Part shown: positions 28,892-53,454 of the stretch, piece after piece
How the letters are laid out: each line of letters begins with the position of its first letter
How positions within the stretch are numbered: the first letter of the stretch is position 1
NCBI RefSeq assembly: GCF_947568905.1
Contig: NC_079170.1
Coordinates: forward strand, 67,890,001 to 67,954,000
DNA from: Ostrea edulis
Lineage: Eukaryota
Direction of reading: 5' to 3'
Length of the DNA: 64,000 nucleotides
The notes under the pieces: generated by a model
Databases searched by the model: none
Seen by the model: the letters and a program-made list of their open reading frames with translations, nothing else
What the model was told of the DNA's origin: nothing
Made by a program: the position numbers and the translations under genes

Positions 28892-29110
28892 TCACTTCTT
28901 CTTGCCAAAGCTGCAGAGAAAATTATTTACTTTCTTTTTTATGGTCTCCCAATTTCGTAGGTGAATACATCCTTCATTTTGTCCTGCTGAATTCAATTGC
29001 TCTTTGGCACTCCGCTCTACTTGGGCAAGTTTTCTTTTTACCATCAAAGTATTCCTCAAAATATTTTCTCATTTCTTCTTCTTCCTCTTTAGTCCATGCC
29101 TTTCTTGTAC
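28892..29110 (-). pseudogene. YR-like gene last exon, Myb/SANT-like helix
   Basis: RKAWTKEEEEEMRKYFEEYF...CPSRAECQRAI...RNWETIKKKVNN...*. One extra base in a homopolymer near 28977-28980. Confidence 0.7.
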
Positions 29111-30654
29111 CTAAATGGTAATGATATTTTAAATGCATTTAAGTTTTTTTTTAAAATGACAACATTCGCTTACAATGTACATGTACTTCATTTAAAATCT
29201 CCATGAATCTTTTTCCACCAGTAAATTTAATCTGAACTAATCTGCAATTTGGCACTTGGCCAACAGAATACTCAATGCATCTTGACATGAGCAGCAAGAA
29301 AATATATAGTTAGGGGTGGGGATTAAAGTTTTTTTTTCAAGATATTTGACCAATTAAATAATTAGGTTGTAGGGGATGACCCCGGGGTACTTGCCGGACA
29401 TAAGAATCAATGCATCTTGACATGAGCAGTAAGAATATATATGGTTTAGGGGTGGCAACTCAGTTCTAATTCAATCATTGTACACATGGCACAAGGAATG
29501 TGTTGTTAACATGTACATGTTGACTTGACTTACTCCCTTTATTTGTTAATTTGTAACTATTATCCAGGTAATATAAAATATTTAGATATTTACTTGATTA
29601 TTTTTTTCCTATTCGACTTTTAATCATACAGGTGTGTCTTTAAAAAAAATTACGATAATATGATGATCTATGAAAAAGAATTATTTCAAATTATAATCAC
29701 CATAATCTTTTAAGCACGTTTATGAATTATAAATGTTTTGTTTTCCACTATAGTCACTTTATAATTTATTAGCAATTTGTTCATGTTTATTTCATTTCAA
29801 TCGTTCGTAAACATTTAGAGTAAACATACAAACAATAATCGTATTTATTTATTTATTATTGTTACTAGTATTATCTTTGCGAAATTATACAAGAATATAT
29901 CTGTTTAATGTGTTTAATGCATTGGAATTTGTGTTTTGAACTTTCTATGCCTTGATTTGTTTTAAATAGCCTTGATCAATTGAAACATTTATGTACCATA
30001 CATAATATAGTTTGAAGGAGAAGCCTTTATCATCAATTCACAGGTATAGGTAATCATCCACCTGTTACAGGAATATTTGGGTGGAAAGGGTAATGGAAAA
30101 ATAAAATTAGAATTTTTTTTATCTCAAATTGTGACCATGCCCCTTTAATATTAAACTATGCCAAAACATCATGTTAGCGAAATATATCCTATCTACTGGC
30201 CTCTCCTGGTATTCATTCGAAATTTACTGTAACAAGTATGTGGTTTTTATGTCTATTTTTTATTTGTTTTTATCTATTTTTTATTCAAAAGTGTACAATA
30301 CCAATTAAAAGCACAATACAATTTTTAACGCATACATTATCATACATTAAAGTTTCTTGTATATTTTTCTTTCTTCAAATGATCCATCAACTACTTTATT
30401 TACAGTGATTACTTATGAGAGATGAATACACAATGGGGATTAACTCTTTTCAAAGTTGAGTAAAAATCATAAGAATTTAAAGTCCAAAGGCCACATTTCT
30501 GCTGAGAGAAGATGAGTATATGTGTAAACTCTGTAAGTTATCAATACAAGACCATGTACTAAAAATCAACTCAATATCTGTGATCAAAAATATTTTTAAT
30601 TTTTTATTTTGTCTTGGGGGGGTATGGTTGATAACACATCCAATAGCTATAAAA

Positions 30655-31790
30655 AATTTAAATACAAAAACCCCTGACCCAGCGTAGGGGTCATGAATTT
30701 TGCGATTTTCCTTACTTATCCTAACCTTGCACTCAGTTTGCCCGCTAGATGTCCTGTGGTAAAGAAGTTTTTAAAGCATTAATGCATTTTCCCTAGATGA
30801 CCTATATATCCCAGACCCAGAACCCCCCATCCTGGGGCCACGAATTTCACAATTTTGGTAAAGGCACCTTTGTTCATCATAACCATGTACTAAGTTTGTC
30901 GGCTAGATGCCCAGTAGTAGGGGAGGTGATTTTTAGAGCCCCGCCTTAACACTAGAAACCCTGACCAAGGGTTGATCCATGAATTTCACAATTTTAGTAT
31001 AGGCTTCAATGCTCACCCTAACCATGCACTCAGTTTGCCTGCAAGATGCCCAGTAGTAGAGAATGTTTGCAGAATTAATGCATTTCACTATATGATCAAT
31101 AGAGCCCTGCTCAAACACCAGAACCCCTGACCCTGGGGCCATGAATTTCACAATTTGGGTAGAGGCACCATTGCTCATCATATCCATGTACTTAGTTTGT
31201 CTGCTTGATGCCCAGTGGTAGAGGAGATGATTTTTAAAGAATTGTATGACCAATAGAGCCCACCCTAACACCAGAACCCATAGACCATTTTCATTTCATT
31301 GGTGTTCCGAAGACCCCCACCTATCCTGGGGGCTTAACTTGCATATCATTTACTCAAGAATATTACATGTTATTACTATATACTCTGTCTGCTAGAAAGC
31401 AAGTAATAGTAAAGTTTTGAAAAATTAATGCATTTCACCAAATGACCAATAAAGCCCTGCCCTAGCACCAGAGCCTTTGATCCTGGGGTCATGAAATTTA
31501 CAATTTTGATATACGCTCCCCTGCCCATCATTATTACATACTCAGTTTGACTACTTGATGCCCAAGAGTATATAAGAAGACTTTTAAAAATTGCATTAAT
31601 TTTTACAGTTTTTACCCAGAATTTAAAGCCATAGGGGTGTGTGGTCATAAAATTTGCGTTCCCTTTCCCATGCAGATGCTACATACCAAATTTGGAGATT
31701 GGCTAAGCAGTATTTGAGAAGAAGTTAATAGTGTTTAAATGTTAACGCACAATGACAGAAGACGAATGATTGAATAGGTCATCTGAGTAA
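30655..31790 (+). mobile_element. HINE with about 6 Cg170-like monomers of roughly 166 bp
   Basis: Repeated aacccctgacc..ggggtcatgaatttcacaattttggtagaggc...cagtttg...tagagaagaagat units ending in a gacagaagacg...aataggtcatctgagt module. Confidence 0.7.
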
Positions 31791-31815
31791 TTCTCTTCTC
31801 AATTATACGACTTAC

Positions 31816-32077
31816 TCTTCTTAGGTTTCTTTCTCGTTACTAATACATCTTCTTCAATGTTCAACGTGTTTAGTGCCATGTCATCAAGAGCTAGACCTGT
31901 ATCTGGTAAAAAAAAAATAATATAAATAAATGCTTAAACCTGCTCTCAGAGAATTGCAGCCTTGAGGTGACTTAAAAAATATATTTCAAATCTTCCTAGT
32001 ACCTTCTACTGAAGGAGCTTCTTCTTCTCTATGGGCTTCTCCTTCTCTGAGGGCAATGTCTTCATTATCAATAATGT
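31816..32077 (-). pseudogene. YR-like gene, two small acidic exons (32003-32077 and 31816-31902)
   Basis: DIIDNEDIALREGEAHREEEAPSVE and DTGLALDDMALNTLNIEEDVLVTRKKPKK. 75 and 87 nt, both phase 1 to 1, AG/GT boundaries. Confidence 0.7.
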
Positions 32078-32139
32078 CTGAAAAAGAAGGATTGAAAATT
32101 ACAGAAACAGCAATATCAAAATTTTAATTGAGACTAAAT

Positions 32140-32730
32140 GAATACCCTCGCAAGCGCGGGAAATCACACTGTTCAGTTGTTAAGAAATTTAATCACTGAC
32201 CATTTTGGCCCCACCCTAATACCAAAACCCCATCCCCTGGGATCATCAAATTTACAATTTTGGTAAAGGGCTACCTGGTCATTCTAAATACATGTATCTG
32301 TTTAGCTTCAATTTAGTATCAATAGCATTAAAGAAGATGTCTTCTTTTAAAATTCTTTTTACACATAAATACTATATATCAAGTTTGGCCCCACCCTGGA
32401 GTCAGAATCTCTACCCCGGGGATCTTGAAATTTACAATTTTGGTAGAAGCCTTCCTGCTCTACATCACTATGCATTTAGTTTTTCTTATACATGTGCGGT
32501 TCTAGAGAAGAAGATTTTTGAAAACTGGTCACTTATTGGCAGTTTTTGCCCCACCCCTAACGCCCCAGGAGTATAGGAGTCCTGAAATTTACAATTTATC
32601 TCTGCTTTGTCCCAAAGATGCTTCATACCAAATTTGAAAAGAATTGGAATGTTAGTTATCAAGAAGTTAAAAATGTTCAATTGTTAACACACGAGGGAGG
32701 ACACAGACCAATTGCAAATCTAATAATTTT
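32140..32730 (+). mobile_element. HINE / Cg170-like satellite module
   Basis: ttttggccccaccct...gggatc(a/t)t(c/g)aaatttacaattttggta units, followed by a ttcataccaaatttgaaaagaattgg 3' block. Confidence 0.65.
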
Positions 32731-33446
32731 AATCCAATACATTTTGGGGGGGGGTGAACATGTTAGGATGATGGAAAACAGAAACTACATCGTCCTAAGT
32801 GAGCGTAGCGAGCCAAAAAAAAGAAAAGAAAAGAAAATTAATTTTCGACAAATTTATTGGAATTTATAGGGCTAATATAGGGAATATGCCATTTTCATGC
32901 AAAGATATAGGGATTATAGGAGGTTATCAAATATATAGGGATTTTATAGGAAATATAGGGCCGCTTGAAGGCCTGGCTACTTGAGCATCTTCTGGAAATT
33001 TCCATCAAAACTAAAATCGCAGATTGAAGAAACGAATTGCATGTTGCATTTTATCTAATTAACAATTATCACATCCTAATTCCTATATATACTTTAAATC
33101 AATTTCCTATTAATATATTGACTATTAACGGATTTATTTAATACTATGTTATTTTTTGCTGCCATTTTCATAAAAACTCCTAATGACGTAGATCCGCCAA
33201 AACGTGCTATTTCGGGTTAGTTTATCGTAAATGAAAGTAGGTTTTAAATTAATTTCACAATAATTGCTGATCAGTAAAAATCAATTATAGTTTACGGACA
33301 TCATCTCAAATGTGATGCAATATTAAAGGTGCAAGCAGTAACTCTGGTGCAAGCATTTCGTAGTTTATTAAAAAAAAATTCATTTATAAGTATAGATAAT
33401 AATCAGTTTTGCTTAATTCCCACAGAAAAGTCTACAAGGTACTTGC

Positions 33447-33634
33447 CTTCAAAAGTAATATCTTTTAAACTTTTCCCATGGAACTTCCCAACTACATTAC
33501 ATTCCTGCATAACCATAAGTTTGGCAATTTCGAGTCTTTCTATTAGATCTGATGTGCTGCGATAATGTAGTTCACGAACTTGCATTGTGTGTCCCATGTG
33601 TCTACACAAGTACTTAAGTTCATGATCCTTGAGC
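33447..33634 (-). pseudogene. YR-like gene exon with the catalytic GH...Y region
   Basis: LKDHELKYLCRHMGHTMQVRELHYRSTSDLIERLEIAKLM...ITFE. Phase 2 to 1, donor AG|GCAAGT (GC-AG intron). Confidence 0.8.
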
Positions 33635-33918
33635 CTAATAACCTAATAATGACAAAGTACAATACAATTTTAAAATGATCATCATTTTAAAACAACAAAT
33701 TACCACAAAATGCAACTTAAGCTTCTTACCACCAGGACATTGCAAGAGTTAACTGTGTCGATTATAAAGATTACAAGCTAAAAGTGTCTATCAATAAGTA
33801 GGAAATAGGTAGTCTACAAATAAAGAGTTAAATGTGTCCATCTATTATACGGTAAGATTAGGAGCTGTAAGTGTCCATCAGTTAGGAGGATTGTGTCCCT
33901 GAATTGCTACATGTAACT

Positions 33919-33920
<2 letters not shown>

Positions 33921-33955
<35 letters not shown>

Positions 33956-34565
33956 TCACCTTGGTCCATATTTAAAGATTTTCCCTACATATTCGCATGT
34001 AAAACTTTGATCCCTATTATGGCCCCAACCTACAATCTTGAATCTGTACTATGTCAGAAAGCTTTCATGTAAATGTAAAATTTTCTGGCCCAGTGGTTCT
34101 TGAGAAGATTTTTAAAGATTTTCATTATATATTTGTATGTAAAACTTTGATCCCCTATTGTGGCCCCACCCTACCTCCGGGGGCCGTGATGTTAACAAAC
34201 TTGAATCTGCACTATGTCAGGAAGCTTTTAAGTAAACGTAAACTTCTCTGGCCCAATGTTTTAAAGACTCCCCCTATATATTTCGATGTAAAACTTTGAT
34301 CCCCTATTGTGGCCCAACCCTACCCCTGGGGGCCATGGTTTTAACAAATTTGAATCTGCATCATATCAGGAAGCTTTCATGTAAATGTAAACTTTTCTGG
34401 CTCATTGGTTCTTGAGAAGAAGATTTTAAAGATTTTCCCTATATATTCCCATGTAAATCTTTGATCCAGTGTTGTGGCCCCACCCTACCCTTGGGGGCCA
34501 TGGTTTTAACAAACGTAAATCTGCACTATGTCAGGAAGCTTTCATGTAAATATAAACTCTTCTGG
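33921..34565 (+). mobile_element. HINE with Cg170-type monomers, 3'-truncated
   Basis: 5' module aacaagaggcccatgggccacatcgctcacctgag, then about 4 units of aaactttgatcccctattgtggcccc...ttgaatctgcactatgtcaggaagctttcatg. Confidence 0.8.
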
Positions 34566-34579
34566 TCCAAGTTTTAAAC

Positions 34580-34945
34580 GCGACCTTTCAAGTATGAATA
34601 AACATACAAATTCTGGCCAATTAGATTCGAGCTTCCATACACAAGTCTAAAAGAAGTTCTACGGCTTCACCTCTTAAAAGTATGATGCCCTACTGTCTGT
34701 TTTATGTTGATTGAAGTTTTTCTTGCTAAAATTGTGCATCAAGTCCGTTCAATAGGCCATTCTTTCATGCGAACAACAAAAACAAACTACCATCGACACG
34801 TTTCTAGATAGCATGCACCTCGCCTGGATTTGTTTACTACACGAAACACCTCGGGCTTTTATGTCAGTCTGTGAAAAAGAAACACGTCCGAACTACCAGC
34901 CAAGATTTCGGCAGCAGCAATCTTATTGGTTAATTGAAAGGTCGC
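34580..34945. mobile_element. Possible MITE
   Basis: Perfect 12-bp inverted repeat gcgacctttcaa / ttgaaaggtcgc. Confidence 0.4.
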
Positions 34946-35121
34946 TCTGAGGTGACCCTGTACGGAATGTTGTTAGATCCTCACAGCAACATATTAAAAA
35001 TATGGGAGCGTAAAGGATTTAATTTTAATTAAATTGATTGATTTCAGCTCTTTCAAGAACTAGTTTATTAATATCCTCAATCAAAATGAATTGCATTTAA
35101 ACATGTTTTATGACATCTTAC

Positions 35122-35245
35122 CAGTATTTGCAAAGAGAAAAGGATTTCCCTCTTTTATACCAGCCTGTTTGCGTACTTCATTTGCAAGATATTGCATGCT
35201 AGGGATGACCTCCTTCGGACATATGACTGGTACTCTGGTCCCATT
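35122..35245 (-). pseudogene. YR-like gene exon (RVPV / LFA region)
   Basis: NGTRVPVICPKEVIPSMQYLANEVRKQAGIKEGNPFLFANT. 124 nt, phase 0 to 1. Confidence 0.8.
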
Positions 35246-36059
35246 CTGACAAAAAGAGACAAACTATTTAATTTTTCTGAATCACGGAAAATTGGCTACA
35301 TCTTCTCACTAAAAAGCTCAATAAAGTTGTATGGTATTCACTACATAGGTCAATATCACTTGCCAGAGACACAATAAAATGAAAACCTAAACATTTCACT
35401 AAAAAATGATTTCTTGTTTTCAATTCTTTTTAAATTCTTTGAAATGGTATTAAAATTCAAACTAAAATTAACAAGCGGAGGATCCCCTCGCAACAGGAAA
35501 TGTTTTTCCAATGTGTTGCAATATACACACTTACAGAGTTAGCTCACCTTTCACCAGATATACTGTAAAATTTGGTCTTTCCTTGAATGTCAATACATTG
35601 AGCAAAGTTAACTGGTTCATATATTGTTTTGTATTGTTAACTTGCACATAAGATTTAAGTTGTATCAACTGGATAATATTGGATATATTGAGAAAAAATT
35701 CACCGATAACTTTGGAAATGAATTGGATTTGACTTACTACAATGCTTAAGAAGTACGCACAGTTTGATGATTCTAGGTAGTAAAGCTTTCTTTCAATCAT
35801 ACTCACAAGTTTTTGTACACTAGTATACCCACACACTTTCATACACATAGCGATGCTATATCCACTTCTCAACAAGTTGCAAAAAGAGATAATAAGACTT
35901 GCAGTACTGCCAAATACTTTAAAATATCCCACTTGGCATTTAGCTAGTTATAATGATTTAACATTATCACAGTAACACAGGTTTCAGGTTGTGAATCTAA
36001 ATACTTACATGTACTTGTATCTTAACAAATATTAAATATATTGTCTCTAAGATGCTCAC

Positions 36060-36183
36060 CTTTCCACGGATTTCAACTAACTCTTGATTTTCTAGCATTT
36101 CCTTTTCCAATTTTGTTAACTTTTCTCTGAGAGAAAGATCGGTTTCTGTGACTCCTTTTGATCTATTTATGTAACACTGCAGG
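36060..36183 (-). pseudogene. YR-like gene exon ending VEIRGK
   Basis: LQCYINRSKGVTETDLSLREKLTKLEKEMLENQELVEIRGK. 124 nt, phase 2 to 0, GTGAG donor. Confidence 0.8.
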
Positions 36184-36350
36184 CTAAAAAGAGAAACAAA
36201 AAATTTTGCATGTAGTCTACCAACCTTACCTGTACAGTAACATATAATGCTCTTGCAAGATGGAGCCATAAAAATAAGATTGACATCATAGACTTAAAAG
36301 CCTAATTTTTTGTTAAAAACAGAAATTCAATTATATGGAACTTGTCTTAC

Positions 36351-38666
36351 CTCAGAGCTTCTAGTTCTCCTGGTCTCCTGCGGTTGTATAACAGAAGACG
36401 TGCTTCCACTAACATGACAATGCGTCTGAACATCAAGCCACTGACAGCAGTGTAAGTTAAATCTAGAGATTCCAAGTTTTCCACTTGGTAAGAAGATAAC
36501 TTGACTATGTCTTCAGGGTGAGGGAGCTCTTTTTTCCTATTAAACATTCGCTCTGACAAAGTAGATCTTGCAATCTTGTTAACTTTGAAACTCCATTCCT
36601 TACTCATGGGAAACATGAATTCTTCTCCCTCTTTCTTCATTACTTTGTCTTGTGTTTTAATGGAAATTCCTACTTTTAAAGATGCCATTCTCATGAGATC
36701 GAAACCTGTTTTGACAGCTGTGCTTGGATGCTGGAGTTCACCATCTTCATTATCATTGCAAATTTGAAGCGCTATTTCTACTACTTTGTCAAAGTTGCCT
36801 GGACTGAACATTTCACTCATTGAAATGTCCATTCTTTCCACTGAATTTCTGAATGCCAATAGGAGGCGGGCTGCCAACCTCATGTGAAAACTTGCGTAGT
36901 ATTTTCTTTTTCTTTTATTGTCATTGTTTTTCATAAACCAAACATCTCCTAATAGTGGATCGGCCATACAAATCTCTGCAATTTTGTCCTTTTTCATTGA
37001 AGGGAACACTTCTTTAACAATCCTTTTGGACCCTGTAGGTTTTACTTTCCCCGTTATGATTCCTACTTGTATCATTGTGTAACCTTTGTGGTAGTCTTCA
37101 CTTCTCACTGGGCATGTTATGAAGGTGATCACCCACGTTTCGTAGCAATTTCATATCTGAAGTCAGCCTTCTCTCCAACTCTTTAATTTCCTCCTGATTC
37201 GTGTCCTTCATCTTACAGTCTCTCAGCTCTTTAATGGCTTTCACCTTGTCATGGTTTAAATGTCTACGTTCAAGATGACTTTGTATGTTGGTGAATATTT
37301 CATGACAGTAAAAACATGCATGCACACAATCATATACCCTATTGTGCTTGGAGTTTGCATTCTCCTTTTTTAATCCCTTAATGAAAACATTTGGAAACTT
37401 TTTATCAAACAGACAATCATTTTCGTCAAGTTCTCTCTTGCATGGTGGGTTGTCCAAGTTTAAATAACCATCTTCTGATGTAGTGATTTTCTTTTCCAAA
37501 ACGGATACACAATCAGACCCTCTCTTGCCTGGTTGGTCATCTGATCCAATACAGTTCTTATCCAATCCTGAAGCACTGTCTGAAAAGTTGTCTATATTCA
37601 AATATCCATCATCTGTTCTAGTAATGTTCTTTTTTAATCCTGCAACATGATTCTGTGACTTTACGACTTTTTCAACATTTTCAACATCAGTGATTGAGTC
37701 ACTGTCACTTCCATCAGTTCCTTCGCTTTCTACAATATAGTCAGGATCATTGAAATCATCAAAATCCTCAAAGTCGCTGTCGCCCTTCAACTGCTGACCT
37801 CCGTAAATTTCTAAAAGATCTCTGTCACTCTCTGGACAATTTTGCTGACACCCGTCTAGCTCTGGACAGTCTCGGTAACTCTCTGTACATTTCTGCTGAC
37901 CTCCCTCTTGTTCTGGACTGTCTCGGTCACTCTCTAGATGCTTCTGCTGACATCCATCAATTTCTGGACAGTCTCGGTCACTCTCTGGACAGTTCTGTTG
38001 ACATCCGTCTAGTTCTGGACAGTCTTCGTCACTCTCTTGACAGTTCTGTTGACCTCCATCTAGTTCTGGACAGTCTCCGTCATTCTCTGGACCGTTCTGC
38101 TGACACCCGTCTAGTTCTGGACAGTCTCAGTCACTCTCTGGACAGTTCTACTTACCTCCGTCTAGTTTTGGACAGTCTCGGTCACTCTTTGGACCGTTCT
38201 GTTGACCTCCGTCTAGTTCTGGACAGTCTCAGTCACTCTCTGGACAGTTCTGCTGACCTCCCTCTTGTTCTGCACAGTCTCAGTCACTCTCTGGACAGTT
38301 CTGCTGACCTCCCTCTTGTTCTGCACAGTCTCAGTCACTCTCTGGACAGTTCTGTTGACATCCGTCTAGTTCTGGACAGTCTCCGTCACTCTCTTGACAG
38401 TTCTGTTGACCTCCATCTAGTTCTGGACAGTCTCGGTCACTCTCTGGACAGTTGTGTTGACTTCAGTCTAGTTCTGAACAGTCTCCGTCACTCTCTGGAC
38501 GTTTCTGCTGACATCCATCCATTTCTGGACAATCTCGGTCACTCTCTGGACAGTTCTGTTGACCTTCGTTACTTTCTGGACAGTCTCTATTACTCTCTGG
38601 GCAGTTCTCCTGCTGACCACCAATTATATAACTCATCTGCTGATCTGCATACTCGATCCAATGCTC
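36351..38666 (-). pseudogene. YR-like gene large exon: 17-aa repeats, acidic region, CxxC...H...H finger, helical domain, box I
   Basis: HACFYCHEIFTNIQSHLERRH, LLRNVGDHLHN, frame break near 37110, then ...LLLYNRRRPGELEAL|GTAAG. Confidence 0.75.
37790..38600 (-). repeat. 51-bp coding minisatellite (about 15-16 units of QQNCPESDRDCPELDGG)
   Basis: Period of 51 bp, in frame with the downstream acidic ORF (37098-37790). One TAG near 38149. Confidence 0.85.
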
Positions 38667-39681: not shown

Positions 39682-39742
39682 CTAAAATGTTACTCCCAAA
39701 TTTTGAATGATTAAAATAAATTTCATTTGTTAGACAATATAC

Positions 39743-39882
39743 ATTTATTGCATGAATATTCGGGAGATATGAAGATTTATTCCCCCAAGAAAAATTTTAT
39801 TTCCCAAGGGCATCGCTCTAAGGAAATATGATTTTTCTGGGGGAATAAATCTTCATATCTCCCAAATATTCATGCAATAAAT
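39743..39882. mobile_element. Palindromic fold-back MITE
   Basis: About 55-bp near-perfect inverted arms (atttattgcatgaatatt..ggagatatgaagatttattcccc / reverse complement). Confidence 0.75.
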
Positions 39883-40253
39883 TGTTTATCATACTTAAAC
39901 AACATACCGCTATAGTAAAAACATTGAGTTCTAACAGTTTCAACTTTGCCAACTCTAATAAAGCAAAACTGTACATGTTCCTTTCTATGTTGATTTTTTA
40001 TTTTTTTATTTCTTTAATCATTCAAATTATATATTAGAGTTGAATTAGTTTTCTGATATAAGATGAATTAGAACATTTATACACTTTATATATCAATTAA
40101 AATAAAAAATAAAATGTTGCTATGGTATCTAGGTGTTTTTGCAAAGTTATAGTAGTCTTTCCCAGCTGAGCTGTAATTGAAAATATAAGAAAAGTGGATA
40201 TATGAGCAAAATTAAAACCTGTACTACCCACGGTTTCAATGGTAGGGGAGTGT

Positions 40254-40532
40254 CACAGCCAATTGTGCCTCATGTGAATTTCATGTGAAGAGAGCAATTA
40301 CATGATTTTCACATGAAATACACTTCACATGAATTTTATATGAAATTTTTTCGCATGAATTTCACATGATTTTTTTGTGTGCAAGATATCACAAAATCAT
40401 ATTTACATATATATGTAAACATGAAAATCACTTCATGTGAATTTCGCATGAAACGTTCTCACGTAAAATTCATGTGAGTGCTCTTTTCACACGAATTTCA
40501 CATGGAATTCATGCGAGGCAGAATTACTTGTG
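40254..40532. mobile_element. MITE with internal ttcacatg repeats
   Basis: Imperfect TIRs cacagccaattgtgcctc / gaggcagaattacttgtg. Interior rich in (a)tttcacatga. Confidence 0.55.
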
Positions 40533-40682
40533 AACAAGCATTAGAAAGTATTAAGAGTTAATAGCAATGATTGTTATGAGGTATCATTAGCATGCTTGAG
40601 TTAATATATGTCACATTCTTTAATTTTCAAGAAAAGAAAATCCACATTTAGGTATAGGACTGGGACAATTATATAAATAATG

Positions 40683-40897
40683 TAAACCAACTTTATTAGT
40701 AACAAAGTAATTTTGGGGACCACAAGCATCAAAGTAGTCCGGGACCACAAATTTACGATTTAGGTTTCATGATGTTTATTCATTGTGCATTTATGTTTAC
40801 TTGCAAAAGTTGTCTGTCCACGACTACTAATATTCATGCCAAAGAGGTCTCGCATTGTTGCAAATATTTTTTGCACACACTAATAAAAGTTGGTTTA
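40683..40897. mobile_element. Small TIR element
   Basis: taaaccaactttatta / taataaaagttggttta inverted ends. Confidence 0.5.
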
Positions 40898-40970
40898 AAC
40901 TTATCTCAATAGGCATATCAATACCATTCAATGAAATATCATTTTTGAAAATCAACTTAGATGGCATTTA

Positions 40971-41362
40971 TGAAAGGTGAAGATAACGAACAGCGACCGA
41001 CCCCATAACTCCTATAAGCAATACAAAATAGAGAGTTGGGCAAACACGGACCCCTGGACACACCAGAGGTGGGATCAGGTGTCTAGGAGGAGTAAGCATC
41101 CCCCGTCGACCGGTCACACCCGCCGTGAGCCCTATCTCTTGATCAGGTAAATTGAGTTATCCGCAGTCAAAATCAGTGTGCCAAGAACGGTCTAACAATC
41201 AGTATGAAACACGCCAGACAGCATTTGACCCAATGATAGGTTGCATTGGCAAACCAGATCATTACAACGACCATAGAACTCGCGAAATGATTACTTTAAA
41301 CAAGACTGTTGAAACCCCTGACCATCAACTTCTTTGTCAGTAGTCTGCCTCGATTTAAAAAC
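40971..41362 (-). mobile_element. Short Naiad-type PLE 3' copy (copy H)
   Basis: Reverse complement of the 3' UTR plus the RT C-terminus. The truncation point abuts the 51-bp satellite. Confidence 0.85.
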
Positions 41363-41930
41363 TGCCTCCTAATTAATGGACAACCTTAACTCCTAAAGAA
41401 TGGACTATTTTTCTTCCTCATAATTGATGGACAATCTTACCTCCCAAAGTATGGATTGTTTAACTGCCTCCTAATTAGTTGACAAACTTAACTCCTAAAG
41501 AATGGACTATTTTTCTTCCTCATAATTGATGGACAATCTTAGCTCCCAAAGTATGGACTATTTAACTGCCTCCTAATTAGTGGACGAACTTAATTCCTAA
41601 AGAATGGACTATTTTTCTTCCTCATAATTGATGGACAATCTTAGCTCCCAAAGTATGGACTATTTAACTGTCTCCTAATTAATGGACAATTTTCACTCTC
41701 AAGTACAGATTTTTCGTTTGCCTCTTAATCGCTGGACAACCTTTGTGCCCAAAGTATGGACTATTTAACTGCCTTCTAACTGGTAGACAATCTTATATCT
41801 TAAAGAATTGACTATTTATCTGCCTCCTAATTGATTAAAAATCTTAGATCTCAGAGTCTGGACTTATTGGACTTTTTATCTGTCTCATAATTGATGGACA
41901 ATCTTAGCTCAAAGTATGGATTATTTACTG
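41360..41930. repeat. 51-bp satellite arranged as a 102-bp dimer
   Basis: aactgcctcctaatt restarts at 41360 and 41462 and onward, alternating with ttcttcctcataattgatggacaatcttagctcccaaag units. Confidence 0.85.
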
Positions 41931-43299
41931 CCTCTTTATAATAACATAATGTACCTTGTAACCTCTCTGTTTTCCTTCCTCTTAGGTGCATGTCCCTTCT
42001 TAAGTGCACCATCCTGACTTTCTACAAAAAATAATCTAAACATCTGTAGACATTGAAAATACAACTGAATGGATGCATAAAAATAAAGCTATGAAACTGC
42101 TAATAACTAAAGTGCTCAAGATTGTCCGATCTTCTGCCCACTGAATTGTTAAGTGCTGTTATCTTCCTAAAAGGTGTTGCCAGTTTTTTTATACATATAA
42201 ATTAAAATTAAAAGAAATTTTACTATAGTATCAAGTTATTTTGTTTAAAGTTATAGAATTTTTAGCCAGCCGAATTGTAATGGAAAATATAGGAAAAGAG
42301 AAGACTTGTGTACAAAACTTTTAAATGGCAGACTAAAGTGTCAGACTCGCGAACTTTAAACATCAAGGATACGGGTTCTCTGTTATATCACTTAGCAAAA
42401 CTCACTGATGATTAGCAACATGCAATAGTAACACTATTAGACTACCATAAAAGCTGAAATATATGCCATTCACAAATAATTCTTGGATTTAAGAGTTATC
42501 AAATTTTGATGAGGAGTGACATTAATTTATTATCATTTGATTTAAAGATACTTTTTTCTTTAAAACTGACAAAAAGTCATCCAAAGCCCAACAGTGCTGC
42601 TCGAACAGCTAACAGACACCATTAATCTTAACCTTGGATTGAATGATCCCAAAATCTGTAGATGTCTTCCTTCAACACTTTTCTACCTATGAAATCATGA
42701 CCAGATGACCATACCCATTGCACTTTTGCTCTATATTCCTTGTAACTACCAGATGTGTTTGTAACTCCATAGATGCAAGTCAAAATGAACAGCAATAGCT
42801 CTGATGGCATATTGACAATGATGCACTACTGCGTATCATAGAATAAGCCAGCAGAGTAATAGCAGTTTATAATGCCATGGTCAAAAAAAAAGAAAAAAGA
42901 AAAAATTATATCGCTTTATCACTTGTATCAACGTGTTTCAAAATAGTATTGCTTAAAATACTAGATGATTTTACAACAATTAACACTCATGATCAGCTTA
43001 GACAAGAAGTCTAGTGTACAATGACTGTTTAAATTTACCGTCCGGATCTGGAACGCAGAATTCCAGATAAACAAGACAAAATATCGTTTAAAAATTCCAT
43101 TCCCAAATAAAATAGACCGGAAACTGAAGCATCCAGATAAATGGCATCCAGATATCTGAAGCCCAACTGTATAGCTTAAGGGAATGTATCTAAACAATTT
43201 CAAGATTTTCATATCATTGGTATAAGGATCATCCAGATGACCCCCCTTCAGGAGACTATGGCTACATATCAATTGCATATCATTTACTTTAAAAATTGC

Positions 43300-43760
43300 T
43301 TGTTATTACTAATATATACTCAGATTGTTTGCTATAGGCCTGGTAATAGAGAAGAAGATTTTGTAAAGAATTGATGCATTTTCCCTTTCTGACCAATAAA
43401 GCCATGCCCTAGCAACAGAACCCCTGACCTGGGGTAATGAAATTTACAATTTTTGGTAGAGGCCCCCTTGCGAATCATTACTATGTACTTTGTTTGCTAC
43501 ATGCCTTAGAGTAGAGAAGAAGATTTTTATAAAATGCATAAATTTTTACAGTTTTTACCCAAACTTTAAGGTCCCTTATGGGTGGGGGTCATGAAATTTA
43601 TAATTTATGTTCCCCTCACCCTACAGGTGCTAAATACCAAATTTGGTCAAGATTGGCTCAATAATATTTGAGAAGAAGTTGAAAATGATCAAATGTTAAT
43701 AGACGACAGGAACAAACACGGATCGCAAAAGGTCACATGGGTGATTCAGATGACTTAAAT
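43300..43760 (+). mobile_element. HINE / Cg170-like fragment
   Basis: Same monomer type as 30655-31790, with a gacgacagg...gatcgcaaaaggtcac 3' module. Confidence 0.6.
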
Positions 43761-44743
43761 TGCTAAAAAGTGTTGCCAGATTAACTGACATGATGGCTAA
43801 TAAAAAGCACCAATAAAAGAGATGCGAGCCTAAAAAAGATCATCTGGTTATTTTGATTACCTTTAGTCCACTTTAGGTCGTCCAAAAAACACTGTAGGGT
43901 CTTTTTCTTTCTTGCAAGACAACCTGAAAATCATAATTGTAGACGAGCATCAAAAATTAGGCCAGGCGTGTTGTTCATCTTGGAGGTATTTACGTTAACA
44001 ATTACATTGACATCCTTTTGTATCTTGTCCATTTCAGTAGAAATAAACATGTTTCCAATACTGCCCCAGATTTGCACATGGGCATGGACCTTTTACCCAG
44101 TCATTTTAGTAAAGGGCCCATTGATGAGTATAATTATGTAAAAAAAAAATTGTCTTGCAAGTCTTATCCGGTTTCCGATTAATCAAAATATTAAATTATA
44201 CAGATGTCTATTATACTGAGATGTTAGGAATATAAAACATAATATTTTTCTTTTCATTTTACAATTGTACAACTTGGCATAGAAATAGTTTACCGAGTTT
44301 GAAATCTAGTTGGGACTATATTTTCAGTGGAACAGTGGTGTATGAAAATATAACTCTTTTTTTTTGCTAATGTACCGATAAATAAATTAGGGATGGTTGG
44401 GGAACCGGAAACACACTATTTATTTATTCAGGCCTAATCAATGAATGTTTTAAAATTAGTCAAGGCCACCTTTAAAAAATTGTTTGTTTGCCCTCTCCTG
44501 ACCGACTGACAAAAAAGTACCTGACTCGAGATATTTTTATTAACAATTAATGTAAGCATAATTTTTTTTGTTGAAATCCAGTTGTTTGCACACCTTTTTT
44601 CTATTTAATTTTGGCACAAATTTTGAAAAAAAAAATAAAAATTTCCCTACCTACCGACCCAAAGATTAAACACCGAGTCGGGAGTGGGCAAACCAACAAG
44701 TTGGTAGGCTCGACTAGTAAAGAAAATAGATCCACATAGTTTG

Positions 44744-45193
44744 TAGGGCTGAAACGATACGCCCCCGGCCCTTCACGATACGATACATATTGCAATACTA
44801 AAGCCACGATTCAATACTTTCAACACAATTTACAGAAGAAACTAATAATAACATTGAAGAAAAATTTAATTACCAAGATTCACAATCATAATTTTAAAAG
44901 CAAAATGTTTCCAAACTGCCGAACGGTAAGATGCCTGTTGGCTCTGTAGTTTAAACTGATAAAGATCATTATTATTTTCGTCAGACTCAAGGCAAACAAC
45001 AGTCTGAACGTTATTGGATGCTATTTTGTCCCTCATGCAGGTTAAAATAATAAGTACAGGCTGAGCCTAATATATTTTACTGAACCCGTTTGTAATAAAC
45101 ATATCGAACTGAAAATCGAGGCAATGAATCGAACATTGAATCGAGCGTTTATATTGAACAGTATCGATATTTCGGTGAATCGTTTCAGCCCTA
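44744..45193. mobile_element. hAT-type MITE
   Basis: Perfect 15-bp TIR tagggctgaaacgat / atcgtttcagcccta. The TSD is only imperfectly recognisable. Confidence 0.75.
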
Positions 45194-46730
45194 AATTAGT
45201 TTGTGGCAATAAAATAGAAACTAAAGTTTGTATTTGAACTTGACCAAAGTATGAACTTTTCTGCCCAATGTTAAATTCACCATGCATGTAAACAGCTGAG
45301 ATATAGTTCATGCCAGTTTGGAAAAAAATCTCTAACAAATTATCACCATGACAAAAAAAATGACTTGCTTTTAATTTAGTTTCTTGCCAAAGTTATTGTT
45401 AGGCCACATAAAATTAATTTTTAGATTCCCATCATTGCCCGCCCCTCTCAAAATATCCCACCCAGCGCTTTTTATATCAGTTTTAAAATATCGGTTAAGA
45501 CCACGAGCATGAACCCTGAACAGCATTCTGTTGTCAACAGAAGCAAAAATAAACTAAGAAGAAAAAAGGAAAGAAGCTAAATTGTATGAATCATATACTT
45601 TTGGTCTTTTCTTCCCATTCTGTGTTATTTTGAAATAGCTCCACATCATCTCTCTTTAGAGAAAATCTACAGAGTGACAAGTCATATTAATTGCATATTA
45701 ATTGCAATGTTCATCTTAATTACCATTAATCACAAGTATGAGAAATCCAAATCCAATTAATACTTCAGGGGTTTTCTTTTTAAAATTTATTCGATTATGC
45801 ATTTTTTTTATCTATTGAAAAACTTTATATAGGTTGGTAAGTTAATAATAAAAAAAATACTAAAAAGCTGATGATATATACTTTATATGCCCCAATCATT
45901 TCATGGCAGGACATAATAATTGCGATGGTGCAATGCAATATGCCTGCTGATTTTGCCTGAATCAAGCCAAAACAAAGTACGTTTTAACTTTTTGATAAAA
46001 ATCGAACTTGGAAACAAGTATTATGTTAATATAATATAGAAATGGTTACAATCTAAAATATTATTTACCATTATTTACTTAATAATCATTCCAAGTACTC
46101 TTAAATTCTGCTTGTACTAAATAATGAATACTCACATAGCATCATCTGACAAGCAATAAACTTTTATGTTACAGTCATCCTCAGATAGTAATTTCACTGG
46201 CCATCGCATTTGACAGGGCACACCTTTAATTCTTGCCCATCGAAACATTTTCAACCTGAAATAGAATTTTCAAAACATTAGTATTAATGATTTTGCATTG
46301 TTCACAGGTTTGAACCTCCTAGCTCTTAGCCAGAGTTCGTTTCCACACAATCCTATTTTATAGATGAGGTCTCAACGTGAAGTTTGTGGTGCAGCATTAC
46401 CGATTTCATGACAAACTCAAGAAATTTTTTGGAGCATTTTTTCTTCACATCTTGTTTTTCTAGTTTTATTTCAGCGTGATCTTCAGCATATTAAAAAATA
46501 AAACGCTACTGCAGGTACCCTTTAAGTAAAAATTATCATAAATATCACCCATGATTTTCAAGGGTTTTTTTTTTCCTTCAGACCCTGTGTAGTTATTTTT
46601 TTATGTGCTGTATTAAGCATGCTGTCTAAGTCTACAAACTTAATAGTGAATTTCCCCTTTCGTTTATTAACTTCATTTTCTAAGTGTCCCTACATTTGCA
46701 GTCATTATTACAACAACAGTGTGCACATTA

Positions 46731-47220
46731 GGCCAAAAATAAAAATAGTTGAGTTTCCGCTAACATTCCAGAAAAAAATAGGGTAGGTAGGTAGGAAATA
46801 TTTTTTTTTTTAATTTTATTTTTCCAAAGTATGTGAAAACATTGTAAGGCCATCATTAAAAATATTTTTGTTTGATGTACTCCGACCCACATTTTTCAAG
46901 GTGGGTAGGTAGGTAGATATTTTTTATTTTTTATTTTTGCAGTATCGAAAAAATTGATTATTGTCATAAAAACGCAGATTTAGAAATTTATTGATGTTTT
47001 CATCAAACATTGGACAAGACAGATTTAATAATTATTGCTATAAAACATTCATCAAAAAAGTTTCTTAGAGAATATAAACCTTTAAAATGAAACAATGTTT
47101 ATTTCCCTGGAAACCAAATTTTAAAAAAAATTAAAAGTACTGAAAAAAAAATGATTGGGTAGGGGCGATTTTCACGGGTCGGTCGGAGTACATCAAACAA
47201 ATCAATTTTTATATTTGGCC
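46731..47220. mobile_element. MITE with GGCC termini (PIF/Harbinger-like)
   Basis: tta|ggccaaa ... tttggcc|taa, plus internal inverted gatgtactccgacc / ggtcggagtacatc. Confidence 0.6.
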
Positions 47221-47255
47221 TAAACTCCAACAAGAAATTTACCTTACAGGTCTAT

Positions 47256-47305
47256 TATTGCTTATAGGAGTTAAGAGATTGATCACTGTTCGTTATCTTC
47301 ACTTT
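47256..47305 (+). mobile_element. 3' tip of Naiad-type PLE (copy I)
   Basis: tattgcttataggagttaagagattgatcactgttcgttatcttcac. Confidence 0.7.
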
Positions 47306-47989
47306 CCATTATGATCTATTATCATTATAACTATAAATGTTCTATTGAATTTTATACTTTCAAAATAAGTTTTGCATAAATTGGATTGCAAGTAAACTTG
47401 ACTTGAGTGTTCTTTTTTTTCTGTAGAAAATTTTTCGATTTAGAGCTAAGTTCTAGCTGTCGAATGCATTACGTCATTGTGTACTGTATAGCACGTGCGC
47501 TTCGTCAAAGTATTTACCGACAGATCACAGAGTAGATAAACGAATATTTATTGGACATATTCAATTTAAATTTGCTTTATATGCTAAAAGATGGCTACAA
47601 ACGCATGCATTATACTAATAAATCATTTTTAATGTCGAATGTTTATGCTATTTTTAGAACGACCGGTGATGGTTGGAAAAACCCACACGTGCATTAACAA
47701 GTGTGTTACTTTGACGGTGTGTAATATCCGACAATAATTGATTATTTTTCACTGTAATAAATGTTTTTATCCAAAATGAAAGCTGAATATGCACCAGTAA
47801 ATTGTAATAAGCATAAATTGACAGCTATTGCATCATACCCCGTGCCGTGATTCGCACTCGACACAGGTGTGAAACATGTGACGCGAGGATTCTAGTAATT
47901 TGAGTTGTCCATGAATTAATTTATAACTGATCACAATTAAAGTAAGTCTTTTCTTAATATTAAGCTGTTATATCATTCATGATTTATGC

Positions 47990-48084
47990 ATAGCGGGAAG
48001 CATAGCGGCAATGTGTGATGCATGGCGGGAGATCGTGAATGCATGGCGGTCCCGCCATGCAAAAACGGCCTGGGGAAACACTGT
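47990..48084. mobile_element. Terminus of a hAT-like non-autonomous element
   Basis: gcatggcgg subterminal repeats ending ...ggggaaacactg (CAGTG end). The partner end was not found. Confidence 0.4.
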
Positions 48085-48658
48085 CCATATAATATTTTAA
48101 GAAAAAAATACTTTTTTCATAATATGAGAAAACTTCAATGCTGATAAAAAAAGATCTCACCTTCTATAATTCAATAACATACTTCTTATATTCAAACCCT
48201 TTCACCGAGCAGTAAGAGACAGGTGTTTGCAATTCAAGAATATCATAAAAAAAGAAAGCATTGTGTCCATCAACAAAGATTTCCAGCACATCAAAGTCAC
48301 AACCTGCACACATAATACATACTCGGAGAATTCAAATGCAGACATTATGATTAATAAACCAACAGGCAAATCATGGTTATCCATAATTCCTTGTAGAAAG
48401 TAACCACTTTCCTCAATCCTTCTTGGTCATAATGGAGTCACAGTTTCCCAATGAACCATGGGGAAATAATGACAATGTCCATATATCACGAGTTAAGCTA
48501 ATAGTAATGGACATATACTGATTTTGATACTCGTCTAATTTGCAAATATTGTGAGTGAAGTATTACTCATCGAATTATTATGAGCCAGGCCATCATTAAA
48601 AATATTTCAGTTTGCCCAAATCCGACTCATGATTATTGGGTATGGGTAGGTAGGTAGG

Positions 48659-48693
<35 letters not shown>

Positions 48694-48989
48694 GAGCGCC
48701 AGATTTTCGAAACTGAATATGTACAAATATAATGCAAGCAACAGATGTCTCTCCAACAAACCTGAAGATGTTCTGTCAGATATTTTAGAATTAAAAACAC
48801 TCAACATTCAAACTGAGTTTTAAAACTGTGTAAAACAACACATCATATCAATGACAGAACTCAGAAACACAGAGAATTACATATGGGGAAAAAAAGTTCA
48901 ATGTTCAATGCATGATTCTCTCCGATTGTCAGATCCTTCTAACAGTGTCAAAAATCATATACCGTATTTTGCCGCAGTTAAGTTTAATA

Positions 48990-49020
<31 letters not shown>

Positions 49021-53445: not shown

Positions 53446-53454
53446 TACCTGTGT

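What the first reader, a model, noticed from the sequence alone, without database searches (positions are those of the whole stretch)
28892..48303. Intron-rich animal tyrosine-recombinase-like gene with integrase-type motifs, nested antisense in an immune gene
Seen after splicing: YNRRRPGELEAL (fits box I R-x-x-E-L), VEIRGKNGTRVPV (compare Xer-type GKG.K.R.VP), NPFLFA and MGH...ELHY (fits LGH...Y). These follow a CxxC...H...H finger and a long helical region and precede a Myb-like C-terminus. No RT is associated, and the motifs differ from the Ngaro YR at 10 kb (GRW-type). Established: Cryptons are intron-containing YR DNA transposons. From memory, similar proteins are widespread in animals as uncharacterised or SET-domain-related models. 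Inference: this is the recombinase of a poorly described large YR-mobilised DNA element, and the best candidate here for an undescribed system. I cannot confirm novelty without searches.
Basis: partly seen in the sequence, partly recalled or inferred. Interest (0 to 1): 0.8.

Follow-up and report, generated by a model that had tools for sequence, protein, structure and literature searches.

The report
Broken zinc-finger tyrosine-recombinase gene in oyster
The window holds a transcribed but broken copy of a gene for a zinc-finger tyrosine recombinase; its large, uncatalogued family appears in scallop and mussel as 15 to over 31 kb DNA blocks copied between chromosomes.

Summary
They lie on the minus strand in exons of a 17-19 kb gene. 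The gene sits antisense between fibrinogen-domain exons at 18.0, 19.3 and 55.4 kb.

The family has 1885 clusters and no Pfam model. An intact member folds as a two-domain tyrosine recombinase (Z 13.1 to XerH). R, K, R, H and Y are at least 90% conserved, with Thr at the box II His.

The window copy is damaged:
- A 146-nt deletion removes the second zinc finger and shifts the frame.
- The exon carrying the second catalytic Arg is absent, and skipping it is out of frame.
- The coding repeat array has six in-frame stops.
- The Myb-like exon has a frameshift.

The copy is single-copy at 90% identity or more. RNA contigs confirm one splice junction.

In scallop and mussel, unlinked copies are 95-99.6% identical over 10-31 kb or more. 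Their sharp 3' ends lie in (GTCC)n, and they carry no RT and no terminal repeats. This supports a large recombinase-borne DNA element at family level, Crypton-like in the broad sense. It is not CryptonA/DUF3504.

Repbase could not be checked. Earlier notes of this scan (s1-287385, s1-287419) describe similar damaged elements elsewhere in this genome.

The parts
48240..48387 (-). Upstream block conserved with the closest relative's locus. It corresponds to an intact 88-codon ORF in L001, and the window copy has a 1-nt frameshift. Its role is unknown (first exon, small ORF or regulatory).
   Evidence: blastn 71% identity to L001 928-1076; alignment and translations; the ORF has only one other record in the protein collection
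46135..46269 (-). N-terminal exon candidate (..WARIKGVPCQMRWPVKL..). It matches residues 44-79 of Pacific-oyster model P0065. It looks PWWP-like by eye, but this is not confirmed.
   Evidence: tblastn E 6e-4; no Pfam hit
43784..43930 (-). Exon candidate carrying the KKKTLQCFLDDLKW motif, which is shared with oyster (P0065) and limpet (P0163) models.
37791..38612 (-). Coding minisatellite of 51 nt x 16 copies (17-aa unit DCPELDGCQQNCPESDR). It has six in-frame stops at 38465, 38333, 38282, 38231, 38150 and 38129, several of the ESDRD to ESD*D type.
   Evidence: TRF; in-frame translation
37101..38126 (-). Exon A open stretch, made of repeats, an acidic region, the first zinc finger (CxxC..H..H) and GDHLHNM. 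It ends in a stop created by the deletion.
37098..37115 (-). Junction of a 146-nt deletion relative to L001. The deletion removes the second zinc finger (GPCPxCxEW..H..C) and shifts the frame.
   Evidence: alignment to L001; protein comparison with P0017, P0007 and P0008; DNA contig of run X1 agrees with the window over 36781-37111
36351..37093 (-). Exon B, encoding the helical core-binding-type domain and box I (YNRRRPGELEAL, first catalytic Arg).
   Evidence: E 4e-109 to P0017; maps to model residues about 60-300 of the YR-fold model; the donor at 36351 is confirmed by RNA contigs
36060..36183 (-). Exon C (..LEKEMLENQELVEIRGK, catalytic Lys hairpin, first half).
   Evidence: acceptor at 36183 seen in RNA contigs X18 rec14 and X20 rec22; tblastn to P0019 and P0161
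35122..35245 (-). Exon D (NGTRVPV...NPFLFANT). It ends in phase 1.
33643..35121 (-). Intron where the exon encoding ..VRAG....ATNLRK[YH]xAT.. (second catalytic Arg) should lie and does not. The stretch 33801-34635 is a very high-copy repeat that includes a 165-nt tandem array.
   Evidence: no tblastn match even at E 100; TRF; read depth of 1e5-1e6 against about 10
33445..33642 (-). Exon E (..HMGHTMQVRELHY.., candidate His and nucleophile Tyr). It starts in phase 0, so a direct D to E join is out of frame.
32003..32077 (-). Candidate acidic linker exon, predicted from splice signals only.
28892..29111 (-). Last exon, encoding a Myb/SANT-like three-helix domain (KAWTKEEEEE...WETIKKKV). It has a +1 frameshift in an A4 run near 28985. 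The stop codon is at 28894-28892.
   Evidence: domain model and weak GT-1, homeodomain and Myb matches; Pfam Myb_DNA-binding E 0.069, below cut-off
17950..55700 (+). Fibrinogen-related host gene context. Exons lie at about 17.95-18.06 kb (CDMTTDGGGWTV), about 19.3 kb (WADYKKGFG) and 55416-55700 (Fibrinogen_C). The recombinase gene lies antisense in the gap of about 36 kb.
   Evidence: I did not show that the three exons belong to one transcript.

Best explanation
The locus is an old, single-copy, still-transcribed but disabled copy of a gene from a large animal family. Family proteins have this order of parts:
- a variable tandem-repeat N-terminus;
- two zinc fingers;
- a helical core-binding domain;
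- a tyrosine-recombinase catalytic domain;
- a C-terminal Myb/SANT-like three-helix domain.

Shown for the family:
- The fold is that of Xer/Cre/integron integrases.
- The catalytic Arg, Lys, Arg, His and Tyr are conserved.
- No reverse transcriptase is attached.
- In scallop and mussel the gene sits in 15 to over 31 kb blocks that are nearly identical on different chromosomes. These blocks lie inside introns of unrelated genes and end sharply in a (GTCC)n tract.

Inferred mechanism: the recombinase excises and integrates its own large DNA unit by conservative site-specific recombination, as proposed for Cryptons. The zinc fingers and the Myb-like domain would choose the DNA sites. Recombination may take place at (GTCC)n microsatellites.

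Shown for the window copy: it inserted, or was inherited, antisense in a long intron of a fibrinogen-related gene. It evolved under purifying selection for most of its history. It now carries a deletion, a missing catalytic exon, nonsense codons and frameshifts, so it cannot make a recombinase.
For: Family and fold:
- 1885 clusters at E <= 1e-3.
- AF2 model of the intact member P0071 has pLDDT 81.
- All top 50 Foldseek PDB hits are tyrosine recombinases or type IB topoisomerases.
- VIA-align gives Z 13.1 to XerH over 280 residues (rmsd 4.4), Z 12.9 to the integron integrase and Z about 11 to Cre, covering both domains.
- Atlas structure hits to XerC/D/H clusters have TM 0.62-0.72 by target.
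- K343 and E299 are invariant, and R296, R417, H443 and Y452 are >=90% conserved across 20 members.

Damage in the window copy:
- Missing Arg-II exon and splice phases.
- Comparison with relatives and the 146-nt deletion.
- Six in-frame stops.

History: dN is 0.18 with saturated dS against the closest relative. The window copy has a short terminal branch, sister to Pacific-oyster K1QY19.

Transcription: the 36351 to 36183 splice is seen in RNA contigs of two runs.

Copy number: read depth is uniform at about 8-26 over exons and unique introns.

Mobility in relatives:
- Pecten loci on three chromosomes are 95-99.7% identical over 10-19 kb, with sharp ends and no long terminal repeats.
- Mytilus loci on two chromosomes are 99.2-99.6% identical over >=31 kb, each inside a different host gene.
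- Both species share the 3' end ..GTACGTCCGTCCGTC.

No RT or other transposon domain lies within the span.
Against: - No second copy, terminus or empty site was found for the window's own copy, so its status as an element rather than a resident gene is inferred from relatives.
- The tree within each lineage roughly follows species relationships, and the exons were long under purifying selection. A domesticated host gene would show the same.
- The 5' ends of the scallop and mussel units were not reached. Large segmental duplication is therefore not formally excluded, and the (GTCC)n end could belong to an adjacent common repeat.
- The box II His is replaced by Thr/Ser in the whole family. No recombination activity has been shown for any member.
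- The 1-nt frameshifts could be assembly errors. A contig break at 37112-37136 and an RNA contig ending at 37099 leave open that an allele without the deletion exists.
Confidence: 0.6

Rival explanations
1. The family is a set of domesticated host genes, such as chromatin or transcription regulators built on a recombinase scaffold like the ZMYM/DUF3504 genes. The window copy is simply a pseudogenised paralogue. The near-identical blocks in scallop and mussel are ordinary segmental duplications.
For: - Multi-exon structure with conserved intron positions and upstream exons shared from limpets to oysters.
- RefSeq models with several isoforms.
- Purifying selection.
- Lineages shared across pteriomorph bivalves, with roughly species-like branching.
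- Single-copy in this genome.
Against: - The catalytic residues are >=90% conserved, unlike domesticated DUF3504 genes, which lost them (PMC3212892).
- There are 1885 clusters at 50% identity.
- Unlinked copies are 99% identical including introns and flanks, and they lie inside introns of unrelated genes.
- Decayed copies are frequent (P0036; this window).
Confidence: 0.2
2. The window gene is intact and functional. The lesions are artefacts of assembly or haplotype choice, namely homopolymer errors and a collapsed repeat-rich intron hiding the missing exon.
For: - Two lesions are 1-nt changes, one of them in an A4 run.
- The intron lacking the exon holds a very high-copy repeat that short-read contigs do not bridge.
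- A contig break and an RNA contig end abut the deletion junction.
- Exons B-E are free of stops.
Against: - The 146-nt deletion is present in contigs of an independent-looking DNA run (X1 rec6), although that run may come from the assembled individual.
- Six CGA-to-TGA-type stops in the repeat array are substitutions, not indels.
- No trace of the missing exon exists anywhere in the 64-kb window.
Confidence: 0.07
3. The family is already catalogued as one of the Repbase Crypton groups not covered by the 2011 paper. One candidate is CryptonV, which is reported to insert into microsatellites. In that case nothing here is new beyond another dead copy.
For: - CryptonV is cited as microsatellite-specific (PMC8869645, reference 33).
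- The scallop and mussel units end in (GTCC)n.
- A cnidarian look-alike cluster exists.
- Cryptons are diverse and active in oysters (PMC13465315; bioRxiv 10.64898/2026.02.10.705023).
Against: - No paper in the searchable library describes a zinc-finger + YR + Myb/SANT architecture or 15-31 kb Crypton units.
- Animal Cryptons are described as lacking a C-terminal domain.
- There is no DUF3504 hit in 20 members.
- The motifs differ from all groups aligned in the 2011 supplement.
Confidence: 0.3

Closest known systems
Crypton DNA transposons (Goodwin et al. 2003; Kojima & Jurka 2011, PMC3212892), in the broad sense of eukaryotic YR-encoding DNA transposons
   Same: - Encodes a tyrosine recombinase without RT.
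- The gene contains introns.
- No terminal inverted or long direct repeats were detected in the scallop copies.
- Copies are dispersed on different chromosomes.
- Decayed copies are frequent.
   Different: - No match to DUF3504 (CryptonA).
- Box II reads TNLRK[YH]xAT...LGH...Y rather than the G[RG]W type (CryptonF/I/S) or NHxLRAT...SGH (CryptonA).
- It has two N-terminal zinc fingers, a tandem-repeat N-terminus and a C-terminal Myb/SANT-like domain, whereas animal Cryptons are described as lacking a C-terminal domain.
- The units are 15 to over 31 kb.
CryptonV (Kapitonov & Jurka 2012, Repbase Reports; known to me only through the citation in PMC8869645)
   Same: It is a YR DNA transposon reported to insert specifically into microsatellites. 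The units here end in a (GTCC)n tract in two species.
   Different: No sequence or description was available to compare. Only the 3' junction was seen here, so target specificity is not shown.
Bacterial/phage Xer-, Cre- and integron-type integrases
   Same: - Two-domain fold (Z 11-13).
- Same order and spacing of Arg, Lys hairpin, Arg, His and Tyr.
- The LGH-type His motif is as in Xer and lambda Int.
   Different: - No sequence-level match to any solved recombinase or to Pfam Phage_integrase (1 of 20 members, at E 0.038).
- Thr/Ser replaces the box II His.
- There are eukaryotic add-on domains and introns.
Starship elements of fungi (Captain YR, DUF3435; PMC10104507)
   Same: Both are large DNA units, tens of kb long, that carry a single tyrosine recombinase gene.
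   Different: - No DUF3435 match.
- The recombinase gene is not shown to sit at the 5' edge.
- No cargo genes were seen. The bulk of the unit is the intron-rich gene plus repeats.

Membership tests
Tyrosine recombinase superfamily (DNA breaking-rejoining fold) | Two-domain architecture: helical core-binding domain plus catalytic domain with the characteristic beta-hairpin | tested here: met
   Shown for the family member P0071. Z is 13.1 to XerH over 280 residues spanning model residues 98-448, and all top hits are YR or topoisomerase IB. The window encodes the core-binding part in full (exon B) but only parts of the catalytic domain.
Tyrosine recombinase superfamily (DNA breaking-rejoining fold) | Catalytic residues Arg-I, Lys, His-II, Arg-II, His/Trp-III and Tyr | tested here: not met
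   In the family, Arg-I, Lys, Arg-II, His-III and Tyr are >=90% conserved, but His-II is Thr/Ser. The window copy retains Arg-I (YNRRRPGELE), Lys (RGK), His (MGH) and Tyr (ELHY). It lacks the exon that carries Arg-II.
Tyrosine recombinase superfamily (DNA breaking-rejoining fold) | DNA cleavage and rejoining through a 3'-phosphotyrosine intermediate | not testable with these tools
   This needs biochemistry on an intact natural member.
Crypton (YR-encoding DNA transposon, broad sense) | YR gene with no reverse transcriptase or RNase H in the same unit | tested here: met
   No RT or other transposon domain was found in ORFs within 28.9-48.4 kb. The RT fragments in the window lie more than 25 kb away. 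The scallop and mussel units contain no other long ORF.
Crypton (YR-encoding DNA transposon, broad sense) | Multiple dispersed copies with defined ends (mobility) | tested here: inconclusive
   Met in relatives: Pecten has 3 chromosomes at 95-99.7% identity and Mytilus has 2 chromosomes at 99.2-99.6% over >=31 kb, both with sharp 3' ends. The 5' ends were not reached. The window copy is single-copy at >=90% identity.
Crypton (YR-encoding DNA transposon, broad sense) | Grouping with named Crypton lineages in a YR phylogeny | not tested
   Reference Crypton proteins were available only as OCR text in a supplement. Repbase is not on hand.
CryptonA / DUF3504 (PF12012) | Match to the DUF3504 profile | tested here: not met
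   None of 20 members hit the profile even at E <= 10, and there is no hit on the window's pieces.
CryptonV | Insertion into microsatellites | tested here: inconclusive
   The 3' boundary lies in (GTCC)n in four copies from two species. The 5' junctions are unknown. In the window, a (GTCC)-like tract lies only upstream, at 52755-52781 on the minus strand.
DIRS/Ngaro/PAT YR retrotransposons | RT and RNase H genes next to the YR; GRW-type box II | tested here: not met
   There is no RT within the span. The motif is LGH-type, not GRW.
Starship Captain (DUF3435) | Match to DUF3435 | tested here: not met
   No hit in 20 members.
Myb/SANT-like DNA-binding domains | Three-helix bundle with conserved aromatic core, recognised by Pfam Myb/SANT profiles | tested here: inconclusive
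   Pfam Myb_DNA-binding gives E 0.018-0.069, below cut-off. The domain model has pLDDT 84. Its best PDB matches are the GT-1 trihelix (TM 0.57, E 1.3), homeodomains and a Myb domain.

The most novel reading that the evidence does not exclude
Bivalves, and perhaps many other animals, may harbour a class of very large (15 to over 31 kb) mobile DNA units without terminal inverted repeats. They would be moved by a zinc-finger/Myb-equipped tyrosine recombinase lying outside all Pfam families, and would integrate at (GTCC)n microsatellites, often inside introns of host genes. That would make them an animal counterpart to the fungal Starships. The window holds a fossil of one such unit that may fill most of the 36-kb fibrinogen-gene intron.
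Probability: 0.25. Interest if true: 0.75.

Novelty: new variant of a known kind. Interest (0 to 1): 0.42.

Why it matters
Tyrosine-recombinase DNA transposons are the least understood class of eukaryotic mobile DNA. The described animal forms (CryptonA/I) are small and match DUF3504.

The family found here differs in several ways:
- It is very large (1885 clusters at 50% identity).
- No Pfam family covers it.
- It keeps its catalytic residues.
- It carries its own DNA-binding add-ons.
- In two bivalves it travels in blocks of tens of kilobases that land inside host genes.

If confirmed as mobile, it would extend the known size and architecture range of animal YR elements. It would also offer natural large-cargo integrases with a possible simple-repeat target.

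The copy in this window is a dead, though transcribed, fossil. It is of interest mainly as a marker of the family and as a case of antisense nesting in an immune-type gene.

Tried and rejected
- **Pfam on exon pieces and full-length relatives.** Pfam found nothing on the catalytic-candidate pieces; only the last exon gave a sub-threshold Myb_DNA-binding hit (E 0.069). Ten full-length relatives gave nothing useful.
- **Sequence searches against solved structures.** Searches with the exon and with two family profiles found no recombinase. The link to YRs rests on structure and motif order.
- **Search for the missing Arg-II exon.** tblastn over the whole window at E 100 found nothing.
- **Synteny test with the closest relative's locus (L001).** The contig is too short on both sides.
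- **Locus of Pacific-oyster K1QY19.** It is not on record.
- **PWWP identity of the N-terminal exon.** No Pfam support, so this is left as an unverified resemblance.
- **The 88-codon upstream ORF.** No Pfam hit and only one other record.
- **(GTCC)n terminus on the window copy.** The only same-strand tract lies upstream at 52.7 kb, and a (GTCT)n array at 23.9-24.2 kb is on the other strand. The terminus could not be placed.
- **CryptonA membership.** Rejected on the absent DUF3504 match.
- **Retroelement (Ngaro/DIRS) membership.** Rejected on the absent RT and the different box II motif.

Full report
**Observation.** YNRRRPGELEAL is at 36388-36353 and NPFLFA at 35146-35129. Stop-to-stop translation of the minus strand between 28 and 49.5 kb shows a chain of open pieces:
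- Exon A (38126-37101): 17-residue tandem repeats, an acidic stretch and a CxxC...H...H finger.
- Exon B (37093-36351): a long helical region ending in YNRRRPGELEAL.
- Exon C (36183-36060): ends ...VEIRGK.
- Exon D (35245-35122): NGTRVPV...NPFLFANT.
- Exon E (from 33642): HMGHTMQVRELHY.
- A candidate acidic exon (32077-32003).
- A last exon (29111-28892): KAWTKEEEEE...WETIKKKV.

Splice signals fit these boundaries. The exon B to C junction (36351 to 36183) is present in RNA contigs of two runs from one study, so the locus is transcribed and spliced. On the plus strand, fibrinogen-domain exons lie at about 18.0, 19.3 and 55.4 kb, and the last hits Fibrinogen_C at E 9.5e-20. The gene is therefore antisense in a gap of about 36 kb within a fibrinogen-related gene. 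I did not show that those exons form one transcript.

**More than chance, and a real family.** Exon B alone finds 1885 representative clusters at E <= 1e-3, with 121 at E <= 1e-30 and a best hit of 4e-109. A UniRef entry from the Pacific oyster (K1QY19) is 80% identical and already labelled 'Tyr recombinase domain-containing protein'. Named members come from scallops, oysters, mussels, pearl oyster, soft-shell clam, limpets, two nemerteans and a firefly, and all are 'uncharacterized'. Pfam recognises nothing. There is no DUF3504 or DUF3435 hit, and one marginal Phage_integrase hit among 20 members.

**Fold and catalytic residues.** An AlphaFold model of the intact 600-residue limpet member, built from a 20-sequence alignment, has mean pLDDT 81.
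- All top 50 Foldseek PDB hits are tyrosine recombinases, protelomerases or type IB topoisomerases.
- VIA-align gives Z 13.1 to XerH (280 residues, rmsd 4.4), Z 12.9 to the integron integrase and about 11 to Cre, covering both the core-binding and the catalytic domain.
- Bacterial XerC/D/H clusters match at TM 0.62-0.72.
- Across members, R296 (R-x-x-E), K343 on the beta-hairpin (RGK), R417 (NLRK), H443 (LGH) and Y452 are invariant or >=90% conserved. The box II His position is Thr/Ser.
- Sequence profiles do not reach any solved recombinase, so the assignment rests on structure plus motif order.
- The C-terminal domain folds as a three-helix bundle. Its best matches, all weak, are the GT-1 trihelix, homeodomains and a Myb domain. 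'Myb-like' is plausible but not firmly shown.

**The window copy is broken.** Compared with relatives it shows these lesions:
1. A 146-nt deletion at about 37115-37098 removes the second zinc finger (GPCPxCxEW..H..C). It shifts the frame, so exon A runs into a stop.
2. The exon that in relatives encodes ..VRAG....ATNLRK[YH]xAT.., the second catalytic Arg, is absent from 35121-33643 and from the whole window. Exon D ends in phase 1 and exon E starts in phase 0, so skipping it gives an immediate stop. That intron holds a 165-nt tandem, very high-copy repeat.
3. The 51-nt x 16 coding repeat array has six in-frame stops, several of the ESDRD to ESD*D type.
4. The Myb-like exon has a +1 frameshift in an A4 run.
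5. A conserved upstream block at 48.4 kb, an intact 88-codon ORF in the closest relative's locus, is frameshifted here.

Contigs of a DNA run agree with the window across the deletion junction. However, a contig break at 37112-37136 and an RNA contig ending at 37099 leave room for a second allele. The 1-nt lesions could be assembly errors. The deletion, the stops and the missing exon are harder to explain that way.

**History of this copy.** Against its closest relative with DNA available (L001), similarity is confined to exon-sized blocks. dS is saturated while dN is 0.18-0.34. In a tree of the exon-B region the window copy is sister to Pacific-oyster K1QY19 on a short branch. The Pacific oyster also holds a member of a second lineage shared with rock oyster, pearl oyster and mussel. 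Read depth over exons equals that of unique intron DNA, so the copy is single at >=90% identity. The copy is therefore old. It was constrained for most of its life and was disabled comparatively recently.

**Is the family mobile?**
- In Pecten maximus, loci on three chromosomes share 95-99.7% identity over 10-19 kb, including introns and flanks. Their boundaries are sharp, they differ in truncation, one carries a 5.2-kb insertion, and they have no long terminal repeats.
- In Mytilus galloprovincialis, two loci on different chromosomes are 99.2-99.6% identical over at least 31 kb. One lies inside an EGF/laminin-G gene on the same strand. The other lies inside a glyoxalase-type gene on the opposite strand, the same kind of nesting as in the window.
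- The scallop and mussel units belong to different lineages of the family, yet both end at ..GTACGTCCGTCCGTC.. in a (GTCC)n tract.
- The units contain no other long ORF, and the window span holds no RT.

The 5' ends were not reached, so neither full length nor target duplication nor microsatellite specificity is established. In the window, a (GTCC)-like tract occurs only upstream (52755-52781, minus strand), and no terminus can be assigned.

**Comparison with known systems.** The closest known kind is the Crypton class of YR DNA transposons.
- Animal Cryptons (A and I) are described as lacking a C-terminal domain and terminal repeats, and CryptonA corresponds to DUF3504 (PMC3212892).
- The alignment in that paper's supplement shows G[RG]W-type box II motifs in CryptonF/I/S and NHxLRAT...SGH in CryptonA. 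This family has TNLRK[YH]xAT...LGH.
- CryptonA elements are diverse and polymorphic in oysters, but this family is not DUF3504.
- CryptonV, known to me only through a citation, is said to target microsatellites. I could not compare sequences with it or with any other Repbase group.
- Four literature searches found no description of this architecture.
- Earlier notes of this scan report similar damaged zinc-finger recombinase element copies elsewhere in the same genome (s1-287385, s1-287419) and call the genome flat oyster (s1-268694). I did not test those notes.

**Verdict.** It is wrong in taking this copy for a working recombinase. I rate it a new variant of a known kind (Crypton-like YR DNA element) with moderate interest. 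The family-level leads deserve follow-up: giant units, the (GTCC)n end and the absence from Pfam. The window copy itself is a fossil.

Noticed in passing
window 33801-34635: A very high-copy repeat that includes a 165-nt tandem array (2.9 copies at 34126-34578). Word depth in DNA runs is 1e5-1e6 against about 10 for neighbouring DNA. It occupies the intron where the recombinase's missing exon should be. From memory it resembles in size the 165-170-bp oyster satellites; I did not check this.
   Followed up: partly
window 41360-41934: A second tandem array with the same 51-nt (102-nt) period as the coding repeat array, at 70-83% matches. It lies in the upstream intron and may be a decayed duplicate of the coding repeats.
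   Followed up: no
window 23880-24240 (+): An array of units of about 60 nt rich in GTCT/GTCC, beginning ..GGTACCTTGTTTCCGTCTGTCTGTC. It lies 4.6 kb beyond the gene's 3' end but on the opposite strand. It resembles the terminal motif of the scallop and mussel units, in the wrong orientation.
   Followed up: partly
window 52755-52781 (-): A degenerate (GTCC)n tract (..CTCTGTCTGTCCGTCTGTCCATCCGTCCGTC..) on the gene's strand, 4-6 kb upstream of the gene. Four overlapping matches to the 11-mer are seen against 0.13 expected.
   Followed up: partly
window 37099-37136: A short-read contig break in a DNA run (37112-37136) and the end of an RNA contig (37099) both abut the 146-nt deletion junction. 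The RNA contig also carries a 9-nt in-frame insertion behind 36953. A second allele or close paralogue may exist.
   Followed up: no
window 1193-1924 (+), 63286-63795 (-): A reverse-transcriptase fragment (RVT_1, E 2e-4) near the start of the window, and a GIY-YIG nuclease ORF (E 5e-8) near its end. Both belong to other elements, far from the recombinase gene.
   Followed up: partly
L006 1-31677 / L007 3657-34806 (Mytilus galloprovincialis): Two unlinked blocks of over 31 kb at 99.2-99.6% identity, each inside a different host gene's intron. They end in (GTCC)n. A 1.5-kb insertion is present in L006 only (3129-4683), and the N-terminal coding repeat differs in copy number.
   Followed up: partly
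L004 23869-25087 (Pecten maximus): Immediately after the unit's 3' end lies a satellite with a period of about 135 nt, and each of its monomers contains GTCCGTCCGTC. The flanks after the (GTCC)n end in L005, L006 and L007 also look like members of one diverged repeat family.
   Followed up: no
tree: The soft-shell clam (Mya) member groups with a nemertean (Tubulanus) member at 99/96 support, and a firefly protein sits on a very long branch. This could reflect ancient paralogy, horizontal transfer or contamination.
   Followed up: no
P0098 (Pinctada), atlas row 3: Some gene models fuse the recombinase to fibronectin-III repeats (pearl oyster) or to a SET domain (chordates). These may be real captures or gene-model run-ons from nested insertions.
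   Followed up: no
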